Positions 1-13,950 of a DNA stretch of 14,967 bases are shown piece after piece. The notes under the pieces are model-generated. The model had not been told where the DNA came from, searched no databases, and saw only the letters and a list, made by a program, of their open reading frames with translations. Origin of the DNA: Fonticula alba ATCC 38817 (Eukaryota; Protista; Nucleariida); NCBI GenBank assembly GCA_000388065.2, contig KB932211.1; one strand, given 5' to 3'. The position numbers and the translations under genes were made by a program. Every line of letters starts with the position of its first letter. Position 1 is the first letter of the stretch.

Positions 1-71
1 ACACATTCCCTCTCGGCCGGTGAGGACGCCCCTACCAGCCGCCTGCATTTCGTGCGCCGCGAGGGACGACG

Positions 72-98
<27 letters not shown>
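72..98. repeat. (CA)n microsatellite
   Basis: Direct inspection; lies downstream of the uS2m stop codon. Confidence 0.95.
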
Positions 99-103
<5 letters not shown>

Positions 104-403
104 GACAACGACGCAAGCTCAGACAAGAGGCTGTATTCTATATATGGAGATATGAAGGGGAAAGGAGTGGGGAAAAGAAAAGGGAAGAAGGGGAGGAGGA
201 GGAGGAGGAGCGTGGCACCCTCTCGACGCAGCGCAACGCAATGGCGCACGCGCACAGGAGCATGCATATGCACACAGCAAGGAGGCGACGCCCCTCTTCT
301 CCCACCCTCACGAGCGCGCGACGGCAGCAGCACACACCACATATAGATATATGCACACGGGGATGCGCGCTCGCGCGCGCGCGCGTACACAACACGCACA
401 CAA

Positions 404-3400
404 TCACAGAATGCGACCGTTGACGTCGGCGGACATGCGGAAGGGCTTGGACGGGTTCATGACATAGGTGTCGATGAAGCTCTGGGCCAAGTCATTCACC
501 TGATCCGAGGGGTAGTGGTGGGTGTACAGGGCCACGCGCTTGGCGAACTCCGGCCGATGGAGGCGACCCGACTCGTTGACCAGCCCCTCGGCGAAGGCCT
601 CCAGGCTCATGACCGGGGCACCGTTGGCCGGGGCGGCGGCGGCGACCTCGGCCGCGGCCTTGTCCGCCTCCTCACGCCGGAAGACACCGGCCAGGCGGGC
701 CACATCCTCGGGCGAGGGCTCCGGCTGGAGACGACGCTCGGTGAGCCGGTGCGCCTCGGCCGGGTCGGTCTCATGGTAGAACTGCAGGCGCTTGGGCCGC
801 GGGGCATTCCGGTTGGGCGGCCGGTAGTTGTCCAGCTCCCGGGTCTTGGACTTGTCACGCGGGGCCAGCAGATGCGGCCTGGGGTCCATGTACGAGCCAT
901 GCTGGCCGATCACCCGGTCGGCCTGGTAGCTGAGCAGCGGCCGCAGGTAGGGGAAGGTCCGGATCAGGTCCGTGTCGACACCGAGCTCCCGATCGAACTT
1001 GGCCAGGGTCCCAGCCTGAGCATGGGCATCGACATTGTAGATGCGCGAGATCAGGTCGTGCGAGCCCTCCTCCAGATCGGTATGGTCGCCGGCGGAAATG
1101 CCACTCGGCTCGAAGGCCCGGCGCTCCTGCTCATTGATCAGCTCATCCTCCAGGACGGACTGGGCCAGGTTCTCCATGTGCGGCGGCAGCTCCAGCCGCC
1201 AGGCACCCTCCACATAGCGGAGCACGGCATTCGGCTTGGCCGGATCCACCGGCAGGCCGGCCATGCGCTCGAGATCCTTCGGCGCCGGGGCCAAGCCCAA
1301 GCGCCAGGTGCCCTCGCCACCGAGGCTGTCCCCGGCCGTGGCCCGATGAAGCAGGCCCAAACGCGACAGGACGTCCAGCGGAGACAGCGACCCGGAGGCG
1401 ACCACATCGCGGTCCAGATTCTCGAAGGCGATGTTGCAGTGGCGCACGGCCAGATCCAGGCGCACGCGCTCCAGCGGGCTGATCGCCAGCGGAGCCGGAG
1501 CCGCACCACGCGTGGGCGGCGGCGTCAGCGACACACCCTCACGCGCCATGATGGACTCCAGCGTGTCATACACGGCGGTACCCGGCCGGGCAGCCGCCGC
1601 CAGGCCCTTGGAGTTATCGGTATTCAGCTTGCCCTGCAGCCACCAGTCCGACCCGTAAACCATGTGCGTGGTTTGCAGGTTCTCCATGCCGATGTTGGGG
1701 TTCAGCAGATCCGGCATGACCCCCTCGCGCATGCGATACTCATCGCGCAGCACGTCGAACAGCTGCCCCGGGCGCGGGGTGGACCCAGCCTCGGTGGCCC
1801 CATCCGGCAGGAGGTTCAGCAGGCTGGCCAGGGTGCTCTCGCCCTGGCGGGCGTCCTGCTGCGTGAAGGATGCCCGCGCGAAGGCCTGCAGCTGGGGATC
1901 CGAGAAGTCCAACTCCCCGAGGATCTTGCGCCGGACCAAATCCGTCATAATGCGAATGAAGTGATCCAGCAGGACCGACTCCGACACGACCGGCGCATCG
2001 GGCGCATCACCGCCGGGCGTAATCGGCAGCAGCTCCTCCAGCGCGGGAACACCCTCATCGGCGGACTCCCCAGCATTGGCATCAGCACCATCGGCCGAGG
2101 CGGCCGACTGGCGCCGGTTGTGCCGGCGGCGCTGGTCAATCAGGGAGTTGGCGTACTCGGAGTTGGCAAGGCGCTCGTCCATCTTGAACTTGGCATACAC
2201 CTCCGGGCCGAGGGCCTTCTCCATGCGAGCCAGGGTGTCGGACAGGTCCACCTGGTCCGGCTTGGCATAGTACCCCATGTAGTGGGTGCAGTACGAGAGG
2301 AAGGCCTGCTCCTGGTGCGGCGCATCGGCCGGGATGCGCGCCATCGCGCGCTCAATTTGCTGGCTGTCCAGCAGCGACCCGGTCAGCGGGGGCAGCTGGT
2401 TGGTGAAGAAGTAGTGCAGCTGGTCCTGCGGGTCGAGCTGGACAAACTCCTCCAGCTGGTTGTACAACGAGCGCAGGGTGATGTCGATGTTGGTGGTGGC
2501 CGGGGTCAGGTCGGCGCAGGTGGCCGCCTCGCGCGCCAGCAACGGGTCACTGAGCACCGCGCCGGTGAAGGCCTTGACCAGCTCCGGCGTCACGCGCGCC
2601 GCATCCAGGTACTGGAAGATGTTCAGCATGACGCGGTACTGCACGTGGGAAATGGTGGGGGCCAGGCGCGTCAGCACCCGCAGGGCCTCCTGGCACCCGA
2701 CCGGCAGCGGGCCATCATGGCGGATGACATCCAGCACCGTGGCGTTGGGGGCCAGACCGCGGCGCAGGGCGGCCTGGCTGATGGGCGTGTTGATGGGAGT
2801 CCCGATGAGGCTGGCCTCCACCGGGAAGAGGTCCGCATACTGGTGGCGATCGGAGGACTGGGCGCCGGTCAGCAGGTGCGGGTTGAGACGCAGGTACTCG
2901 TCGGAAATGCGCATCGGCGAGTTGCTGCCAAGCAGGTACGGGTGCCCGAAGCGCTCCATACTGGCGATGTTGGCGAAGGACTGCGAGAACTCCGGCACAC
3001 GGCGGAAGCGGTTCAGGACCTTGGCCGTGCGGCTGGCCTGGATCACCGAGTCCAGGTAGAACTCCACCAGCGTGTGGGACCGGTCATTGGTGGGGACCGG
3101 GTAGGCGAACTGCTGGGGGTTGACGTCGGAGTTGCAGAAGGCTGGCGGGGGGGGGGGGGGGGNNNNNNNNNNNNNNNNNNNNNNNNNNNNNNNNNNNNNN
3201 NNNNNNNNNNNNNNNNNNNNNNNNNNNNNNNNNNNNNNNNNNNNNNNNNNNNNNNNNNNNNNNNNNNNNGGGGGGCGGAAGGAGAGGGCAGGACGGAGGA
3301 GGCACACATCAGGGGTCAGTCAAGCAGAAAAGGAGGACACCGCGGGGAGGGGGGGTGCCAAAAGAAAAACCAAAAAGGACCGCCGGAGCCACAGCAGCCA

Positions 3401-4451
3401 CGACGACGACAACGCACCAACAACCGGGATGTTCAGCAGACGGCACTCATTGAAGAGAGCCTCCTGGGAGTTGGGGTCGAAGACGACCACCGCATCCGGC
3501 AGGTGGTTGGGGTTCTCCAGGATAATCTGCCGGTTGGTCAGGGTACCGGGAATCCAGCGGTTGACCACGTAATAGAGCCCGGCCTCGCGGCACTTCTTGG
3601 TGATGAGCTCCTGCGGGATGATTCGGCAAGAGCGGGGCAAGGGGCGGTGTCGGGGCAACGGTCAGAGGCGCGCGAGGAGAGGCCAATCAATGGGAGGAGA
3701 GAGGAGGAAGGGGGAGGGGGGGGAGGGACGACGCGACCAGCGGCCCACGCACACGGTACAGCAGGTTGTTGCAGACAACCAGGATCTGGCCATTGAGGCG
3801 GGAAACCTCCTCGATGAAGGACAGAGCGCGGCGCAGATTCAGCAGAGTGTAGTCCAGGTTGAAGATGGTCCGGTTCTTGCGGGTACCCAGCACGTAGGGG
3901 CGGTTGTTGAAGTGCCAGGTGCTGCGCTCAAGGCCGCGGTGGGCCTTCAGCCGGAAGAGCGTGTTCAGGTTGATCAGGTGGTGCGCCGGCGAAGTGCCAA
4001 AGACGTGCATGCCCTTGAACTCGACCGTCCTGCCCTGTGTGCGCGTGTTGCGAGGGGGGATGGGCATGGAGGAGGTGAGCCGAGATGCGAATATGGTTAG
4101 AGTGGGTCGGTCATGCCGGGGGGGGGGGGGTGATAAGAGATACAAGGGAGGAGCAAGAGGGGCAATCAAAGGATTAGCCCAAAAAGATGGCGACGTGGAA
4201 GGGAGAGGGAGAGAAGGAAGATGGCTGGAGACACGCACCTGAGGCGGATTCTTCTTGTGCGAGACCTGGGACCGGGCCTGCTCGGTCACAGAGCCCAGGG
4301 TGAGCGGGACCGGCCGGCGCAGGCCCTTGTTGTTGGGGGAGGCGGTCGCAAAGTTCCGAGAAGACAGGGACGACACAGCGGCCAGCCTCTGAGTGGAGCT
4401 CAGGGGGTTGGTCGCAGGTCGGAGCGCCAGCTTGGAGAAGCTAGGCAGCAT
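404..4451 (-). CDS. MRPS2: Mitochondrial ribosomal protein uS2m with long C-terminal extension; join(complement(4239..4451, 3753..4034, 3418..3610, 404..3141)), 1141 aa
   Basis: Splicing at GT..AG junctions with matching phases (0,0,1) gives a continuous S2-family domain: LFRLKAHRG..WHFNNRPYVLGTRKNRTIFNLDYTLLNLRRAL, YYVVNRWIPGTLTN, LPDAVVVFDP, EALFNECRLLNIPVV|AFCNSDVNPQQFAYPVPTND. The segment between GTLTN and LPD is short, as in animal MRPS2. The N-terminus looks like a mitochondrial presequence. Exon lengths 213+282+193+2738 = 3426 nt. Confidence 0.9.
3142..3417 (-). other. Spliceosomal intron 3 of uS2m gene (contains N gap 3163-3269)
   Basis: Donor GTTG|GTGCGT, ACTGAC branch motif, poly-C tract, acceptor CGCCAG|CC; phase 1 restores IPVV-A-FCNSD. 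Confidence 0.85.
3611..3752 (-). other. Spliceosomal intron 2 of uS2m gene
   Basis: Donor CGT|GTGCGT, CTGAC branch motif, acceptor CCGCAG|GAG; removal joins NNLLYR to ELITKKC within the S2 domain. Confidence 0.85.
4035..4238 (-). other. Spliceosomal intron 1 of uS2m gene
   Basis: Donor CAG|GTGCGT, internal C-rich tract, CTAAC branch-like motif, acceptor ACACAG|GGC; phase 0. Confidence 0.8.
4340..4451 (-). other. Predicted mitochondrial targeting presequence
   Basis: MLPSFSKLALRPATNPLSSTQRLAAVSSLSSRNF-ATAS is rich in S/L/R/A, has no acidic residues, and has an R-x-F|A cleavage-like motif. Confidence 0.75.
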
Positions 4452-6286
4452 GACGACAGGTTGGTATCAATGCGTGATGGGCGCGCTGAACCGGAGAACG
4501 GGGAGGGGGGAGGACGGTGGGGGGGGGACCGGCGAGGTCAGTCGCGGCGGGAGGGGGAGGGGGCTTTGAGGGAGGAGGAAGAGGAGGAGGGGGAGCCACG
4601 CGGCAGCACGAGCCCAACAAGAACAAGGGAGTCGACCAAAGCAAGACGGGATCTGGCGGGCCGTGGAGCAGTGGCGCCCGGGCGGGTGAGCGCGAGCATG
4701 CACGCGCACGTGCGCGTGCGCGTGCGCTTCCGTGCACGAGCGCATACACACACATACACGCGCCGAAGAGATCCGCTGGCGAGAGGCAGGAAGAAGGGAA
4801 AACATAAACAGAGGGGAGGGGGGCGGAGAAGGCTGGCAGAAGAGCGAGGAGCAGAAGGCTGGCGGCGAGGGCGAGGAGGACAGCGGCAAGAGAGGCAAGG
4901 AAGGAGGGAGGAGATGGACAACCTAAAGTGACCAAACTGAGGCGATTTCCGGGGATATGCTATCCCCCCGGAGGGCAGCGCTTCTTGTTCTGTGCCCTCG
5001 AGCGCGGAGAGGCTCCTGCCTGGTGCCGGCTCCGGCCGGGGAGGAGAATGGGTCGCGTGCGTTGTGTGGCCCTCCGTGTCTGTGTGTGTGTCCCTCGGGC
5101 GCACACCGCGAGGCTGGGACGGAACCACGGGCCGGGGGAGGGGGAAGCCCAGCCCGCGCGTTCCCGGGCCCCGCCAATTTTCGCGCGCCAGTAGCTCCCA
5201 GCCACGCCGACACGCCACACGGAGGCCCTTCCGCGCCTGAACCGGCCAGGGCCGAACGGCCACAGAGCCCTGCCGCCCCGCCCGCACGCCGCCACCGCCC
5301 CCGCACAGCCGTTCACACACAGGGCCCGGCCCGGCGCGCCGGGCCCCTCTTCTACAGAGGGGGCCCCAAGCCTGACCACCATGCCCCGAACCGCGCCGCC
5401 GGATGCGGCCAGGGTTTTTTTAGTATTTTGCCCGGGATCGGTCGCCAGCACAGGGACCGTGAGTGGGCACTCTGGTGAGCATCTCTCGGCGGCGCGGACC
5501 GAGCGCCGGGCTTCTCCCGGTCCAGGACGCCAGGAGCCGGGCCTTCCACGGTGCACAGACCGACCAGACGGACAGACGCACACACCCATGCACACGGAGG
5601 AGACACAGCCGCGGACGCACACGCACACGTTCGGACACCGGCCCAGGCGGGGCGATGGCCGCCCAAATTGCAGACATTTGTGCCTGTGGCTGCATGGTAT
5701 TTGGCCGTGGGAACAGGCGGAACAGTGTTCGAGCATCAGCAGGGCCCGGGTCCACTCGCGTGATCCACCTCCTCACATGCCAATGGAAGTGCGTCGCGCT
5801 CGCCCCTCCGGGGCGGGCGGATCTCCCGATTGATCGGCAGAACGGCAGCGAGCCAGGCACCCGGGGAACTGGCCGGGGGACCGTCTCAAATACATCCTCC
5901 TGTGTGCGCGCGCTGCCATCCATATCCCGGCGCGCCCGGCGGCAGCACGCGAGCGGGGAATAAAAAGTGTCGATTAAATGGGCATCCACTAGCGCCAAAG
6001 CGCGGTGGTTATATCTATTTGGGGGATCGCCAGGGGGGGGGGGGGGCAGTTGCGCTGGGGAGGGAGGCATATCTAGCTGTCGGGGGCTTGGTGGCAAAAA
6101 GGAGAGAGAGAGAGAGGCAGCAAGAGTGGCAGCGGCAGCCGTATACGGGCCCATCTCACACATCTATACAGGCATCCATTTTAGATGGGGTGGCGCGCCA
6201 CACTCCAGCCTGCCCAATACCCATCTACCGGAGGAGGGGAGGGGAGGACAAAAGGAGCGACGGGAAGACCCATGCGCCTCGGCCCG

Positions 6287-7220
6287 TCACACCCCGAAGA
6301 CAATGGCCTTGGGAGAGAAGCCAAGACGCCCGACCTGGGAGTTGTGGAAGCCAATGGCCTCCTGCACCAGGTCCTTGTCGGCCAAGTTCAGCCGGTTGAT
6401 GGTCGGGTGGTTGATGCAATCGCGGATGATGGGAACCGCCCGAGTGACGATGATGTTTGAGCCGGTCTGCTGCGCGGGGACCAGCTCATGGACCACATTG
6501 CGCCCGGCCAGGAAGGCGGTGAAGCGCCCGGACGAGAAGACCTCCTGGCCGGCGGTCTTGATGGATGCCGGCTTGAAACGGTGGAACACATGGCTCATGA
6601 GGGCCTTGCGGATGTCACCGAGGGTGGGAGCGTCCGGCACCGGCACGGCGATGATGAACAACGAGAGGATGTCGAACACGATCAGGTGGTTCTGCCCGTG
6701 GCCCGAGGGCTCGGGCACACGGGACAGCCGATGCAGCCCGATGGCCAGGGCATGCATCGGATTGTCCGGCGTCCGGGTGGGGCCCTGTCGGGCCCCGGGC
6801 GAGGCCTGGCGCGCGGCACAATGGCCACACTCGCTGGTGACTTGGCGCACGATCGGCTTAAAGCCCCCCACGATGAAGAACCCGCGCATGATGCGTAGCA
6901 TGACCGCGATGCTGGGATGGTCCATGTGAGCATCGTGGTGCAGGAAGCGCACCAGCCTCTCGGTCCAGGCTGGCGGAATGACAAGTCGGTCGTCCTCCAG
7001 CAGGAACCCATCGACCATGTGGCCGCGGGAGCGCTGTGCATCCGGGATGTCCCTCTGCGCCTGGCGGATGAGAGTGTTTAGATCCAGTTTGCCGCTCGGC
7101 GGGCTGGCGGGGCTCTTGGCATCAAGCGGCGGGCTCTTTGAGCGGGATGATCCCGGAGGCGGGGGCTTTTGGGAGACCGGCGAGGCGAAAACCCGGGGGA
7201 CGCCGCCAGGCCGCTGTTGC

Positions 7221-7344: not shown

Positions 7345-10300
7345 GCGACTGCGACTGCGGCTGCGACTGCGACGCCGCCTGCGACTGCGACTGCGGCTCC
7401 GACTGCGACTGCGGCGGCGACGGCGACTGCGGCTGCGACTGCGACTGCGGCTGCGACTGCTGCCCGTGATTGACACCGCCACGCGGGCCGGGGCAGGGCG
7501 CGGCCTCGGAGCTCGGGTCGACATCCATGTGGGTCGTGCCGAGGGGGGGCCCGTGCGGCGAGGCACACACCTCGGCACTGCCGAGCCCCGGGATGTACAG
7601 CCGGTCGTCCGGTGTCAAGTTCGAGTGCACGGTGGCCGGCATGCCGAGCCCGGTGGCCGGGAGGACCGTCTCCCCGGCACCAGCATCCCCGGGCCCGGCG
7701 AAATGGTGGTCCCCCAGCGGCACACCGACGATCTGGCCGCCGGTGCGCCGGCCACGAGTTGTCTCATCCAGCGTGGCCGCCAGCGACCCGTCCACCTGCC
7801 GGGTGAAGCAAATCCACCGGGGAATGCGCGACAGATAGTCGGCCGCCGGGTTGTCCTGGCCCGGGACGAAGACAATCTTGGCCAGGGGGAACTCCTCCAG
7901 CCGGGCAATCCACCGGGCCTTGCGCAGGCAAATGTACTGCTCCCGGCGCCAGGTGGAGATGGCCATGTTATCGGTGAAGATGGTGATGGGCAGGCCATTT
8001 TGCACATGCGGCGCCCAGTGCTCCAGGGCCATGATGATGCCGAGCATTTCCTTCTCGTGCACCGGGTAGGCCCGGTGCGCCGGCGGCAGGGCCTTGGAAA
8101 AGAATTCGATCGGGAAGCGCTCCAGCCGGTCGGTCCCCGGCACCGGGCGATACTGCAGCAGCACGGCCCCGACACAATCGCCCGACGCATCGGAATAGAT
8201 GTAGTACGGCTGGTCGATGGCCGGCGCGTGGATGGCACACGCGTCGGCAATCAGGTCCCTCACCGCGCGGAAGGCCTGCGTGGCTTGGGCCGTGGCCCGG
8301 AGCTTGCCGGTGGAATTCCCCCGGAGCAGCTGGTACAGCGGCTGGGCCAGGCGCGCATACTCCGGCAGCCAGGCCACCAGGAAGGAGGCATGGCCGAGGA
8401 AGCGCCGGAGCTCCGCCAGGCACCCGGGGAAGACCAATGCCCGGGCCTGCTGCACCCGCTGCTCGGTCAGGTCGATCTTGCCCTGCCCCATGACGAAGCC
8501 CAGGTACTCCACCTGGGCCAGGCCGAAGTGGCACTGGCCGAGGGCCAGCTCCGCATGGTGGGCATTCAGCCGGGACAGGACCTGGTGCACATGCTGGACA
8601 TGGTCGGCCTCCGAGGCGGAAAACACCACGATGTCCTCCATGAAGAAGGAGCAGAACCCCTCGCAAGGCTGGAGGATCTTGCCCAGCTCGGTGGCCAGCA
8701 CGAAGGCCGAGTGCGTCAAGCCGGCCGGCAGGCGCCGGTACCGATAGTACCGGCCCTGGAATTGGAAGACCAGCAACTGCCGCGATGCCTCATCCACCGG
8801 CACATGGTGGACCCCATGGGCCAGCCGCAGGGTGGTGAAGATCCGGCCGCTGGCCGCCCGCTGCAGCGGCGTATGGCCCACGGCCAGCGACATGCGATTC
8901 GGGCTCGGCACCACGGCATTCAAAGCACGAAGGTCCATGCATGGCTGGACCTGGCCACGGGCCGTGCTCACCATGATCAGCGAGGCCGCATGGGGGTCGG
9001 CCACGGTCGGCTCGATGACCCCGGCTGCCAGGACCTCCTGCAGCCAGGCCTCCACCTTGGGCCAGTGCATCACCGGCACCGGGATGTGCTCCGGCAGGTC
9101 GCGCTCCTTGGCCGAGTCCACCGGGATGACAAAGGGCGTCGTGTGGCGGAAGACCGGATACGCCGGCCGCTGGCGGAAGGCCTCCAGCAGCGGCTCCCAC
9201 GAGGGGTCCCGCATGTGGGCCCCGGTCAGCGGCCGCAGGCGTTCCCNNNNNNNNNNNNNNNNNNNNNNNNNNNNNGCGCTCCTTGGCCGAGTCCACCGGG
9301 ATGACAAAGGGCGTCGTGTGGCGGAAGACCGGATACGCCGGCCGCTGGCGGAAGGCCTCCAGCAGCGGCTCCCACGAGGGGTCCCGCATGTGGGCCCCGG
9401 TCAGCGGCCGCAGGCGTTCCATCCGCGGGGCAATGTCGAACTCGTAGTCCAGCGCGTCGTTGCGCCCGCGCGGCAGGAGGTCCTGGCCGCGTGGCTCCAG
9501 CGTGGCCGTGCCCTCCTTGGGCGGCTCATCGGCCGAGGCCAGCAGGTCCACCAGCCCGGGGACCAAATCCGCGAAAACCTCCGCCTCGAGCATGATATAC
9601 TCGTGTGCCACATCCAGCACCAGGGCCCGGACCGTGCGGCTGGCCCCGGATGGCCAGATCGGAAGAGCACACGCAGGTCCACCAGCCCGGGGACCAAATC
9701 CGCGAAAACCTCCGCCTCGAGCATGATATACTCGTGTGCCACATCCAGCACCAGGGCCCGGACCGTGCGGCTGGCCCCGGATGGCCGGTACACCGCGAAG
9801 GCGCACACATGCGTGGCATTGGACATGCGGCCGTCCAGGCCGCGGAAGCGTGTCAGCTGGCGCTCCAGCTGCAGCCCAAACCGGGCCACCATCCAGTACG
9901 GGATGACCGACACATCGGCCCCGGAATTGAACTTCATCCACACATTCCCATGGAAGGAGGTCCGGCGCCGGACCAGAAACCGCCCGCCCGAGGGGTGCGG
10001 GCTGGGATCCCCGCGCGCCGGGCCGGCCCCGGGCATGGACGAGGGGGGCATCTGCCCGCCGGGGGTGGGCCCGGGCCGGGGCCGCGGGGCATCGGCCGAA
10101 GGCCCCTCCTCCAGGCACATGTCCCCGTCCGGCGTCGTGGTGGTGGCGGGCCCGCCCACCGGCGGGCTGGCGGCGGGCGGCGAGTCCGGGGACGGCCAAT
10201 CGCTCGAGGCCGCCGCGAAGGGGCCCCCACCATCCGGCATCGGGTCGAACCCCTCGCTGGACATCGGCCCCAGGCCGCCGGCGGTGGGGTCGTCCCCGGC

Positions 10301-12127: not shown

Positions 12128-12427
12128 CTTGCTGCGCGGCGTCAGCGGCGGCCGGGCAGGAGGGGGAGAAAGGAGGGGAGGGGGGGGGGATGCCGGGGAA
12201 GGCAGGAGTTCCTGCCCCTGTGGCGCGTCGTGGCTTGGATGTGTCTGGGCGGGAGGAGATCGGGCGAAGTTGGTTGGTTGGGGGGATCTCCCTCGCGGGA
12301 GGGGGGGGGGGTGCCGAGCAACTCGCGTGCCCTTGTAGTCGCCGGTCTTGTTTGCGTTGGCAGATCAGCGAGGGGCATGGGGCCGATCCGCGACTGGTCC
12401 CCTCGGCCTCCTCCCCCTGGCGGATGC

Positions 12428-12458
12428 ACCCACCCGCCCACCCACCCACCCACCCGCC

Positions 12459-12492
<34 letters not shown>
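12428..12492. repeat. (CCCA)n-like tract followed by (CA)n microsatellite
   Basis: cacccacccgcccacccacccacc...cacacacaca. Confidence 0.9.
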
Positions 12493-12497
<5 letters not shown>

Positions 12498-12916
12498 ATT
12501 CACGCGTGCAGGGCACCGGAAGGTCATTGTCCCCCCTCTTCCGCGCGGCCGGCAGCGGGGCTGTCCCGGCGTGAAACGAGCGTGGGCGGGTGCCGCGACT
12601 CCGGTGTGGCGTGTGCTCGGAGAGCGAATGAGAGCAAGCGCCGTGGCCCCTCCCCTCTCTGGCCCGCCCCCGGTGCCCTCTTTTGGCGAGTCCCACCACC
12701 GCGCCCCTCGCCTGCGAAAACACAGCACCGGCAAAACTTCGATTATTAATGGGAAAAGGGAGGGAGATCGCATGCGCGCGCACGGCGGCGCCAGCTGTCT
12801 CTCTCTTGCGCGCCTTGGGAGCGGGACCCACACATCCGGAAGTGCGCGGAAGAACTACAGAAGGGGGGAGGAGAGAAGGTCAGAAAGAGAGAAAAGAAGA
12901 GGGGAGACGGGAGGCA

Positions 12917-12934
12917 GAGAGAGAGAGAGAGAGC
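12917..12934. repeat. (GA)n microsatellite
   Basis: agagagagagagagag within a purine-rich tract. Confidence 0.85.
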
Positions 12935-13433
12935 GAGCGAGAACAGGAGAGGAGGAGAATTTCCGGCGCGGCATGAGACGGGCGCGGGGAGGCCCCCACG
13001 CTCGTCGGAAAGAGCCGCGACGTGTGGATCTTGCACGAGACTCAAAGGCATAGTCACGGTCTAATCATTCCCCGTGAGGTATAGACCGCCGGCTTATTGT
13101 GCAACATGGATGGGGAGAGGCGGGAGGAAGAGTGGGCAGGAGGAGGGGCATATGTGCAGGGGGGCGAGCGAGGGGGGGCGGGGGGGAAGGGTGGGGAGAA
13201 GGCGCAGGGGCGCAAAAGAAGGGGCGTACAGGGAGGGCGGGGGGGCGGCCGGGCCAAGCGGAGTGGGTAGCCCGATGTGTGCCGGGACTGCCACCGGGCA
13301 CGCATATAAATACTCCCCGCCTGGGAGGTCCGCTGTGACCCATACACAGACACACACGCACACATGGGCGCACACCTCGCGCGGTGGTCTCCCCCTCCCC
13401 CTCGGATGGGCCGCCCCGAGGAGGGGGGCTGGG

Positions 13434-13463
13434 AGAAAAAAGAAAAAAAAAAGAAAAAAAAAA
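13434..13463. repeat. Interrupted poly-A tract
   Basis: agaaaaaagaaaaaaaaaagaaaaaaaaaa within GC-rich intergenic DNA. Confidence 0.85.
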
Positions 13464-13950
13464 GAGTGTGCAGTCGGGCGCCCGATCCGAGGGGGCGGGC
13501 GGACGGGCACAGGGTTTTCCCTGACGCCGCGGGACCGGGGGGAGGGGGGAAAAGTGACATCGGACCCGGAGAACCGATCGGGGCGAGCCGCTCGCCAGGC
13601 CACCATGGACGGGCATCTGTCCTGTTCTGTGGTGCCTGCCAGGGGAGCCGGCGCGAGGGATGCGGCCCCAGATTGTCGTTCTGGTGCGGCGTGGGGTTTA
13701 GGATTGGTGCGGGGCGTGATGCCGGACGGCGTGACGGCCGCCGTGCTCCGTCAGAACCCTCGCCGGTAACCCAGCGCGGCATCCCTCCGTTAACTCGACG
13801 GCTGAGTTCTATTTGCTGGGTACATGTTCCGCCCCCCATCTCTCGGGCATGGACCGGAGGCACGGGCCCAGAGGGCACAACAACAAGCACAGGGCAGAGG
13901 GCAGGGCAAACAAGGCAAGTGGCCAGCTCGGCCACCCCCCGGGCGAGGCG

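What the first reader, a model, noticed from the sequence alone, without database searches (positions are those of the whole stretch)
404..3030. Mitoribosomal uS2m carries a ~870-aa C-terminal extension
Seen in sequence: the S2 domain ends near LDSVIQAS, but the same exon stays open and GC3-biased for about 870 more codons with no stop or intron, giving 1141 aa. Known: bacterial S2 and animal or yeast uS2m are only a few hundred residues. The extension is largely complex sequence, probably helical, with one acidic/Ala linker (SAASADGADANAGESADEG), and I recognise no domain in it. Inference: either a large lineage-specific mitoribosome expansion or a fusion of uS2m to another mitochondrial protein, possibly cleaved after import.
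Basis: partly seen in the sequence, partly recalled or inferred. Interest (0 to 1): 0.7.

Follow-up and report, generated by a model that had tools for sequence, protein, structure and literature searches.

The report
Giant-tailed mitochondrial ribosomal protein uS2m
The amoeba Fonticula alba makes a spliced mRNA for a mitochondrial ribosomal protein S2 carrying an 875-residue tail that matches nothing else in public data, probably as part of a wider enlargement of its mitochondrial ribosome.

Summary
The gene lies on the minus strand and is NCBI H696_05468 of Fonticula alba (1141 aa).

- **Layout:** a mitochondrial-type leader, an S2 domain ending at residue 266, then 875 more codons in the same exon (window 3031..407).
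- **Coding signal:** that frame has no stop, GC3 of 0.79-0.96, and A at only 0.3% of third positions.
- **Transcript:** spliced cDNA contigs of 3.6-3.76 kb from four runs (two samples, one study) span the whole ORF with no mismatch. They remove four GT..AG introns and show no joint inside the big exon. They also bridge the 107-N assembly gap, which sits inside an intron. Misassembly and early splicing are therefore excluded; a minor shorter isoform is not.
- **The tail is an orphan:** I found no Pfam, NCBIfam or PDB match, no paralogue in its own genome, and only itself among 1.84 billion representative proteins.
- **Tail properties:** it is acidic (pI 5.4, against 10.1 for the S2 part), non-repetitive and has no membrane segment. 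Structure models were too poor to use.
- **Context:** uS10m of the same genome has a similar ~430-aa orphan tail. The mitochondrial small-subunit rRNA is full length.

Most likely this is a lineage-specific extension kept on the ribosome near the mRNA exit. Cleavage after import remains open.

Earlier notes of this scan flag similar giant tails on other Fonticula mitoribosomal proteins elsewhere in the genome.

The parts
4923..4937 (-). 5' non-coding exon; only its last ~15 nt are seen, and its true start is unknown
   Evidence: The 13 loose letters at the 5' end of all four RNA contigs (table 7) match window 4925-4937 exactly. None is expected by chance.
4486..4922 (-). 5'-UTR intron, 437 nt, GT..AG
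4239..4485 (-). First coding exon. ATG at 4451-4449. Residues 1-71 are a mitochondrial-type presequence (8 basic, 1 acidic, 15 Ser/Thr in the first 60).
   Evidence: The RNA contig piece covers 4238-4487. The translation equals P0001 1-71.
4035..4238 (-). Intron, 204 nt, GTGCGT..CAG
   Evidence: Joint in all four runs
3753..4034 (-). Coding exon 2, residues 72-165, start of the S2 domain
   Evidence: Pfam PF00318 at 42.5 bits, profile positions 3-64. The best PDB matches are mitochondrial uS2m chains.
3611..3752 (-). Intron, 142 nt, GTGCGT..CAG
3418..3610 (-). Coding exon 3, residues 166-229, middle of the S2 domain. The bacterial coiled-coil hairpin (profile positions ~103-144) is absent.
   Evidence: Pfam PF00318 at 47.6 bits in two stretches, the best at profile 71-102. 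The own-genome scan places profile 69-101 and 145-180 side by side in this exon.
3142..3417 (-). Intron, 276 nt as assembled, GTGCGT..CAG. It holds the assembly gap of 107 N (3163-3269), flanked by poly-C.
   Evidence: The joint 3141/3418 is in all four runs and bridges the gap
3032..3141 (-). Start of the large exon: end of the S2 domain (residues 230-266, ...LDSVIQAS)
   Evidence: Alignments to bacterial S2 and to mammalian uS2m end here. Weak Pfam match to profile 179-213.
407..3031 (-). Orphan C-terminal extension, residues 267-1141 (875 aa), pI 5.45
   Evidence: Open frame, GC3 0.79-0.96, A3 0.3%. Covered without joint or mismatch by RNA contigs. No relatives found.
2105..2701 (-). Residues 377-575: the most consistently helical stretch of the extension, a possible folded domain
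   Evidence: AF2 single-sequence models at low confidence: pLDDT 35-48 in the whole-protein model and 52.5 when folded alone. No structural match.
2051..2107 (-). Acidic/Ala low-complexity linker, residues 575-593
404..406 (-). Stop codon TGA
218..403 (-). 3' UTR as far as the RNA contigs reach (218-253)
   Evidence: table 8

Best explanation
This is the single nuclear gene for the mitochondrial small-subunit ribosomal protein uS2m of Fonticula alba.

**Shown.** It is transcribed and spliced (four GT..AG introns) into an mRNA of about 3.7 kb with one 1141-codon reading frame. That frame encodes a mitochondrial presequence, an S2 domain of the mitochondrial type that lacks the coiled-coil hairpin, and an 875-residue acidic, non-repetitive tail. 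The tail has no detectable relative anywhere.

**Inferred.** The tail stays attached and is carried on the mitoribosome. It would be anchored through the S2 domain on the solvent side of the small subunit beside the mRNA exit. There it would add protein mass or a docking surface, bound by protein-protein rather than RNA contacts, given its acidity.

**Inferred, partly checked.** It is one instance of a Fonticula-wide accretion of long orphan tails on mitoribosomal small-subunit proteins. This accretion has happened on a full-length, bacteria-like rRNA, so it is not compensating for rRNA loss.
For: - **Gene and S2 identity:** Pfam S2 matches above the cut-off in exons 2 and 3. PDB matches are to uS2m of mouse, Neurospora, plants, yeast and human. 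The database names the 1141-aa record 'Ribosomal protein S2', Fonticula alba.
- **mRNA:** one spliced contig per run in four runs spans 4487..218 with 0 mismatches. It has joints only at the introns and none in the large exon.
- **Coding signature along the whole tail:**
- **Orphan status:** phmmer against 1.84e9 representatives finds only itself. The word search finds only itself. No other protein of 627-1997 aa matched the S2 part in the word search. There is no Pfam, NCBIfam or PDB match and no paralogue in the genome.
- **Charge:** the tail has pI 5.45 and the S2 part 10.1.
- **Order and membrane:** there is no membrane segment. A charge-hydropathy estimate places the tail on the ordered side.
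- **Parallel case:** uS10m has a ~430-aa orphan tail with GC3 of 0.82-0.92.
- **rRNA:** the mitochondrial small-subunit rRNA is 1609 nt and matches the bacterial model end to end at 773 bits.
Against: - No protein-level evidence exists. Presence of the tail on the ribosome is inferred only.
- Contigs cannot show minor isoforms, transcript ends or strand.
- All RNA evidence comes from one study.
- The structure models were unusable (pLDDT 35 and 52), so nothing is known about the fold.
- Plant mitochondrial RPS2 tails are reported to be removed (Perrotta et al. 2002, cited in PMC3464924), so a tail in the ORF need not be in the mature protein.
- No orthologue from nucleariid relatives was available, so constraint on the tail could not be measured.
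- Proteins of 370-626 aa were never candidates in the S2-domain word searches.
- Only one of the other 'giant' mitoribosomal genes was checked here.
Confidence: 0.6

Rival explanations
1. Precursor that is processed. The 1141-aa product is imported and then cut between the S2 domain and the tail, either in the poorly structured stretch 267-376 or at the acidic linker. Only a normal-sized uS2m would then enter the ribosome. The tail would be degraded or would act on its own as a separate mitochondrial protein.
For: - Plant mitochondrial rps2 genes encode C-terminal extensions that are processed (Perrotta et al. 2002, PMID 12369627, cited in PMC3464924).
- The first ~110 residues after the S2 domain have almost no predicted secondary structure.
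- A low-complexity acidic linker lies at 575-593.
- The tail's acidity is unusual for a ribosome-bound extension.
Against: - Strong codon bias and an unbroken frame over 875 codons argue that the tail's sequence is used, not discarded.
- A comparable tail on uS10m, and others noted in this genome, would need parallel processing of many proteins.
- No cleavage motif can be recognised.
Confidence: 0.22
2. Gene fusion with a once separate, non-ribosomal mitochondrial gene, for example an mRNA-specific translation factor or an assembly factor, that now rides on uS2m.
For: - The tail is large enough for one or more independent domains.
- The helical block 377-575 is separated from the rest by a linker.
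- The uS2 site beside the mRNA exit is where such factors could act.
Against: - No free-standing homologue of the tail exists in the 1.84e9 representatives, in PDB, in Pfam or in the Fonticula genome itself.
- There is no trace of a former stop, start or intron boundary between the S2 domain and the tail. The S2 domain's end and the tail share one exon.
Confidence: 0.13
3. Artefact: misassembly across the N gap, a retained intron, or a chance open frame in GC-rich DNA, so that the real uS2m is short.
For: - A 107-N gap lies inside the gene.
- GC-rich DNA gives long chance ORFs. The antisense strand shows a 1093-aa one.
Against: - The gap is inside an intron, and spliced RNA contigs join exon 3 to the large exon across it.
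- The S2 domain's last 37 residues and the tail lie in the same exon and frame.
- There are no joints in the exon in four runs.
- The frame-specific signature (GC3 ~0.9, A3 0.3%) is that of coding sequence, and P(open) is about 8e-7 under a position-specific null.
Confidence: 0.03

Closest known systems
Fungal uS2m: Saccharomyces Mrp4 (394 aa; PDB 8d8k_B, 5mrc_BB) and Neurospora uS2m (428 aa; PDB 6yw5_BB)
   Same: Same S2 domain (E about 1e-19 to 1e-18). Nuclear-encoded and mitochondrial. From the same supergroup (Holomycota). Carries lineage-specific additions around a bacterial-type core.
   Different: In the fungal chains the S2 match starts at residue ~159-180, so their additions are largely N-terminal and amount to about 150-200 residues. 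Fonticula adds 875 residues at the C-terminus, giving 2.7 times the length of the longest solved uS2m. The tail shows no sequence similarity to the fungal chains.
Mammalian uS2m / MRPS2 (289-296 aa; PDB 3j9m_AB, 7pnt_B)
   Same: The best full-domain alignments run from query 31-201 to chain 74-248. The domain is aligned in one stretch, whereas bacterial S2 aligns in two stretches separated by its hairpin.
   Different: Mammalian chains end about 45 residues after the domain. Fonticula continues for 875.
Plant mitochondrial RPS2 with a C-terminal extension (Perrotta, Grienenberger and Gualberto 2002, Plant Mol Biol 50:523, PMID 12369627)
   Same: An S2 protein of mitochondria whose reading frame runs far beyond the S2 domain at the C-terminus.
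   Different: - By the paper's title, the plant genes are plant mitochondrial genes and their extension is removed after translation. I saw only the citation.
- The Fonticula gene is nuclear and spliced, and its tail matches no other protein.
- Whether the Fonticula tail is processed is unknown.
Lineage-specific extensions and extra proteins of protist mitoribosomes in general (for example the trends reviewed in bioRxiv 10.64898/2026.10.06.756942 and PMC7947838)
   Same: The same phenomenon: bacterial-core ribosomal proteins acquire lineage-restricted sequence. As in plants and Andalucia, this is not tied to rRNA loss.
   Different: The scale for this protein is unusual. I found no mention of Fonticula in that preprint, and no paper in the held library links Fonticula with an enlarged mitoribosome.

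Membership tests
Ribosomal protein uS2 (Pfam PF00318) | S2 alpha/beta domain scoring above the curated cut-off of 26.1 bits | tested here: met
   Exon 2 scores 42.5 bits and exon 3 scores 47.6 bits. The own-genome scan gives 39.4 bits, and 51.9 bits for the joined neighbours. PF00318 is precomputed for P0001.
Mitochondrial uS2m (as opposed to cytosolic uS2/RPSA) | Bacterial-type S2 sequence closest to solved uS2m chains, plus a second S2 locus in the genome for the cytosolic protein | tested here: met
   The top PDB matches of exon 2 are uS2m of mouse, Neurospora, plants, cattle, human and yeast. A separate S2-family hit lies on contig C6. I did not characterise that locus further.
Mitochondrial uS2m | N-terminal mitochondrial targeting presequence | tested here: inconclusive
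   The first 60 residues have 8 Arg/Lys, 1 acidic and 15 Ser/Thr, which is typical. No targeting predictor was available.
Mitochondrial uS2m | Physical presence in the mitoribosomal small subunit | not testable with these tools
   Needs proteomics or cryo-EM of Fonticula mitoribosomes.
Plant-type RPS2 with processed C-terminal extension | The reading frame extends far beyond the S2 domain at the C-terminus | tested here: met
   875 residues follow residue 266.
Plant-type RPS2 with processed C-terminal extension | Encoded in mitochondrial DNA | tested here: not met
   The gene is nuclear with four spliceosomal GT..AG introns. GC is about 68% on a 637-kb contig.
Plant-type RPS2 with processed C-terminal extension | The extension is removed post-translationally | not testable with these tools
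   No protein data.
Lineage-specific mitoribosomal extension | No homologue of the added sequence outside the lineage and no known domain | tested here: met
   Caveat: it is unknown how well nucleariid relatives are represented in the libraries.
Lineage-specific mitoribosomal extension | Other mitoribosomal proteins of the same organism are similarly enlarged | tested here: inconclusive
   Shown at sequence level for uS10m only. Six-frame Pfam scans for mS29, mS26 and bS18 gave no hits, so those notes could not be checked. The uS5, uS9 and uL3 hits were not analysed.

The most novel reading that the evidence does not exclude
Fonticula alba has a mitochondrial small subunit of exceptional protein mass. 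Many of its proteins (uS2m, uS10m and, by earlier unchecked notes, mS26, mS29, mS31, mS45 and bS18m) would carry hundreds to thousands of orphan residues on an unreduced, bacteria-like rRNA. The acidic uS2m tail would form a new platform at the mRNA exit that recruits mRNAs or factors. That would be a previously undescribed mitoribosome architecture within the fungal side of the opisthokonts.
Probability: 0.3. Interest if true: 0.75.

Novelty: new variant of a known kind. Interest (0 to 1): 0.52.

Why it matters
Mitoribosomes differ greatly between lineages. Why they accrete protein is debated: compensation for lost rRNA, or neutral ratchet-like growth.

Here, in a close relative of fungi, a core protein has grown roughly three- to five-fold (1141 aa, against 212-428 aa for the solved uS2m chains) with sequence found nowhere else, while the small-subunit rRNA remains full length. 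That argues against compensation.

If the tail, and the similar tails of other subunits, are really on the ribosome, Fonticula would be an attractive cryo-EM and proteomics target. It could show how new ribosomal mass arises and what it does at the mRNA exit, the region where fungal mitochondria are thought to recruit mRNA-specific translational activators (my own knowledge, not checked here).

If the tail is instead cleaved off, it is a second, independent example of the odd plant RPS2 precursor arrangement.

Tried and rejected
**Searches of the tail that found nothing**
- ESM Atlas feature search of the tail, twice: no usable hit.
- Pfam on the whole tail and on three pieces at E up to 10. 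Only sub-threshold noise appeared: VMAP-M2 at 15.7 bits and HTH_31 at 12.7 bits.
- NCBIfam: nothing.
- phmmer against PDB at E up to 10: nothing.
- Self-comparison for internal repeats: none.
- Comparison with the uS10m tail: best E 0.032 in a single pairwise test, not significant.

**Structure attempts**
- AlphaFold2 without an alignment gave mean pLDDT 34.7 for the whole protein and 52.5 for residues 365-580. Even the S2 domain only reached about 50.
- A Foldseek PDB search with the second model gave no match below E = 1. I regard it as meaningless.
- I therefore did not spend the VIA or atlas structure searches.

**Checks of other mitoribosomal proteins**
- Six-frame Pfam scans of the genome for DAP3 (mS29), MRP-S26 and S18 found nothing, so three earlier notes could not be checked.
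- The uS5, uS9 and uL3 scans gave hits that I did not work up.

**Other blanks**
- The look-up of encoding contigs had no record of P0001.
- Paper searches for a published giant uS2m or a Fonticula mitoribosome found nothing relevant.
- There is no canonical poly(A) hexamer inside the large exon. The Fonticula signal is unknown, so this is weak evidence.

- I did not build a joined protein from the exons. The exons were searched one by one by reference.
- The database record P0001, returned by the search, was used by reference after I checked that each exon's translation is an exact piece of it.
Full report
**Where and what.** The window comes from contig C11 of a 31.3-Mb, 214-contig genome. 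Earlier notes of this scan name it Fonticula alba. The protein search confirms this: the product is NCBI 'hypothetical protein H696_05468 [Fonticula alba]', called 'Ribosomal protein S2' in UniRef, and is 1141 aa long (P0001). The gene is on the minus strand.

**Gene structure.** Reading the sequence together with the RNA contigs gives the following layout.
- A short 5' non-coding exon ending at 4923.
- A 437-nt intron (4922..4486).
- Coding exon 1 (4485..4239, ATG at 4451).
- A 204-nt intron.
- Exon 2 (4034..3753).
- A 142-nt intron.
- Exon 3 (3610..3418).
- A 276-nt intron (3417..3142).
- The large last exon (3141 down to at least 218), with the TGA stop at 406-404.

All four introns are GT..AG, and the three introns that interrupt the coding sequence begin GTGCGT. 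The run of 107 N (3163-3269) lies wholly inside the last intron.

**Checking the observation.** The S2 family is found exon by exon: 42.5 bits in exon 2 and 47.6 bits in exon 3, against a cut-off of 26.1, with a weak match to profile positions 179-213 at the start of the large exon.
- Alignments to solved structures end at residue ~266, at the LDSVIQAS motif. Bacterial S2 and mammalian uS2m chains end about 25-45 residues after that point.
- The longest solved uS2m chains are 428 aa (Neurospora), 394 aa (yeast) and 296 aa (human).
- In Fonticula the same exon and frame run on for 875 more codons.
- That stretch has no stop in frame, against 17 and 20 in the other sense frames.
- GC is 0.70, 0.45 and 0.88 at codon positions 1, 2 and 3, and A is at only 0.3% of third positions.
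- The chance of staying open is about 9e-9 under a base-composition null and about 8e-7 under a null that keeps the composition of each codon position.
- GC3 is 0.79-0.96 in every 100-codon window.
- The 1093-aa ORF on the plus strand is the expected shadow of such a frame: antisense frame 0 has 0 stops.

**Transcript evidence.**
- Four public runs of 2012 (two samples, one study) each hold one contig of 3625-3760 nt. It lies on 4487..4238, 4033..3752, 3609..3418 and 3141..218-253, with no mismatch and no gap.
- The three skipped parts have CT..AC ends on the plus strand, which is GT..AG on the minus strand.
- The 13 extra letters at the contigs' 5' end match 4925-4937, which reveals a fourth, 5'-UTR intron.
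- Genomic DNA cannot give such records, so the runs are cDNA, although the run table only guesses 'RNA?'.
- No joint falls inside the large exon. The contigs run about 150-190 nt past the stop.
- They join exon 3 to the large exon across the assembly gap, which excludes a misjoin.

Limits: contigs drop rare variants and cannot show transcript ends, strand or abundance, and all four runs come from one study.

**What the tail is like.** I found no relative of any kind.
- Pfam, whole tail and in three pieces: nothing.
- NCBIfam: nothing.
- PDB sequences at E up to 10: nothing.
- ESM Atlas features: nothing.
- The word-indexed search of 5.8 billion clusters: only itself.
- The exhaustive phmmer scan of 1.84 billion representatives: only itself.
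- The Fonticula genome in six frames: only itself.
- A search for S2-domain proteins of 627-1997 aa: only this protein.
- The S2 part alone found three ordinary proteins of ~330 aa at 25% identity.

Proteins of 370-626 aa were not candidates in either S2-domain search.

Its physical properties are as follows.
- The tail is acidic (pI 5.45; 117 Asp/Glu against 91 Arg/Lys), while the S2 part has pI 10.1.
- It has no internal repeat.
- It has no membrane-like segment; the maximum 19-residue hydropathy is 1.24.
- It falls on the ordered side of a charge-hydropathy estimate.
- It contains the acidic/Ala linker at residues 575-593.

AlphaFold2 without an alignment failed: mean pLDDT was 34.7 for the whole protein and 52.5 for residues 365-580. 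It suggests only that residues 377-575 are helical, that about a third of the tail is helix, and that 267-376 has little structure. Foldseek found nothing below E = 1. The fold is unknown.

**Context in the genome.** Earlier notes of this scan flag several other Fonticula mitoribosomal proteins as giant: mS29, mS26, mS45, mS31, bS18m and uS10m. I treated these as leads only.
- I checked uS10m myself. The S10 domain on contig C3 is split by an intron, and the second exon continues for about 430 residues beyond the domain. GC3 is 0.82-0.92 and there is no Pfam match.
- The uS10m tail is not similar to the uS2m tail.
- My six-frame scans for mS29, mS26 and bS18 found nothing, so I could not check those notes.
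- The mitochondrial small-subunit rRNA (contig C214, 1609 nt) matches the bacterial model from position 1 to 1533 at 773 bits. It is not reduced.

**How it most likely works.**
- *Shown:* there is a real, spliced mRNA encoding presequence, S2 domain and an 875-aa orphan tail in one frame.
- *From established knowledge:* uS2 sits on the solvent side of the small subunit between head and body. It lies next to the mRNA exit (PMC12672651) and to the docking site of bS1. The engineered S2-S1 chimera 4toi is among the PDB hits.
- *Inferred:* the tail remains attached and projects from or spreads over that face. Because it is acidic, it probably binds other proteins rather than rRNA. These may be other enlarged subunits or factors that handle mRNA. 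It arose by accretion on an intact rRNA, not as a patch for lost RNA.

I put this at about 0.6. The main rival, at about 0.2, is processing after import, as reported for plant mitochondrial RPS2 (Perrotta et al. 2002, cited in PMC3464924). A fusion with a formerly separate orphan gene is at about 0.13; it cannot be excluded and has no positive support. An artefact is at about 0.03.

**Comparison and novelty.** As a uS2m the protein passes the sequence tests. Its physical presence in the ribosome is untested. Long lineage-specific extensions of mitoribosomal proteins are a known phenomenon. What is unusual is the size, about 2.7 times the longest solved uS2m and three to five times the usual, and the complete lack of relatives. 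It also sits in a close relative of fungi that keeps a full-length rRNA.

The gene model itself is already in public databases. I found no paper in the held library that describes it, or an enlarged Fonticula mitoribosome. I class it as a new variant of a known kind, of moderate interest alone and higher interest as part of the genome-wide pattern.

Noticed in passing
window 4486-4937 (minus strand): The uS2m mRNA has an extra 5' non-coding exon (seen from 4937 to 4923) and a 437-nt GT..AG intron in the 5' UTR. The large exon is therefore the fifth exon.
   Followed up: yes
window 515-3796 (plus strand): A 1093-aa open frame lies antisense to the gene. It is a shadow of the GC3-rich coding frame (0 stops in antisense frame 0) and not a gene.
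   Followed up: yes
L008 (G000:C3:2685600-2691600), about 959-2385, plus strand: The mitochondrial uS10m gene has its S10 domain split by an intron. The last exon continues about 430 residues past the domain, with GC3 of 0.82-0.92, no Pfam family and no similarity to the uS2m tail.
   Followed up: partly
L013 (G000:C214:4584-6192, minus strand): The mitochondrial small-subunit rRNA is 1609 nt and matches the bacterial SSU model end to end (773 bits). The rRNA is unreduced despite the enlarged proteins.
   Followed up: partly
window 3163-3269 and 9247-9275: Two runs of N. The first (107 N, flanked by poly-C) sits in the last intron of uS2m, so the true intron length is uncertain. The second lies inside the Ty3/gypsy-like ORF noted by others.
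   Followed up: partly
window 60-120 and 4746-4763: CA/GT microsatellites flank the gene. An unrelated, more abundant 1.75-kb RNA contig touches them only through the repeat (records 2, 4, 6, 8).
   Followed up: no
window 4960-5736 (-), 12190-13053 (+), 13054-13935 (-), 5967-6929 (+): Long ORFs with no Pfam match. In this GC-rich DNA they may be chance or shadow frames.
   Followed up: partly
L001 (G000:C6:1915550-1915750, minus strand): A second S2-family locus in the genome, presumably the cytosolic uS2 (RPSA) gene.
   Followed up: no
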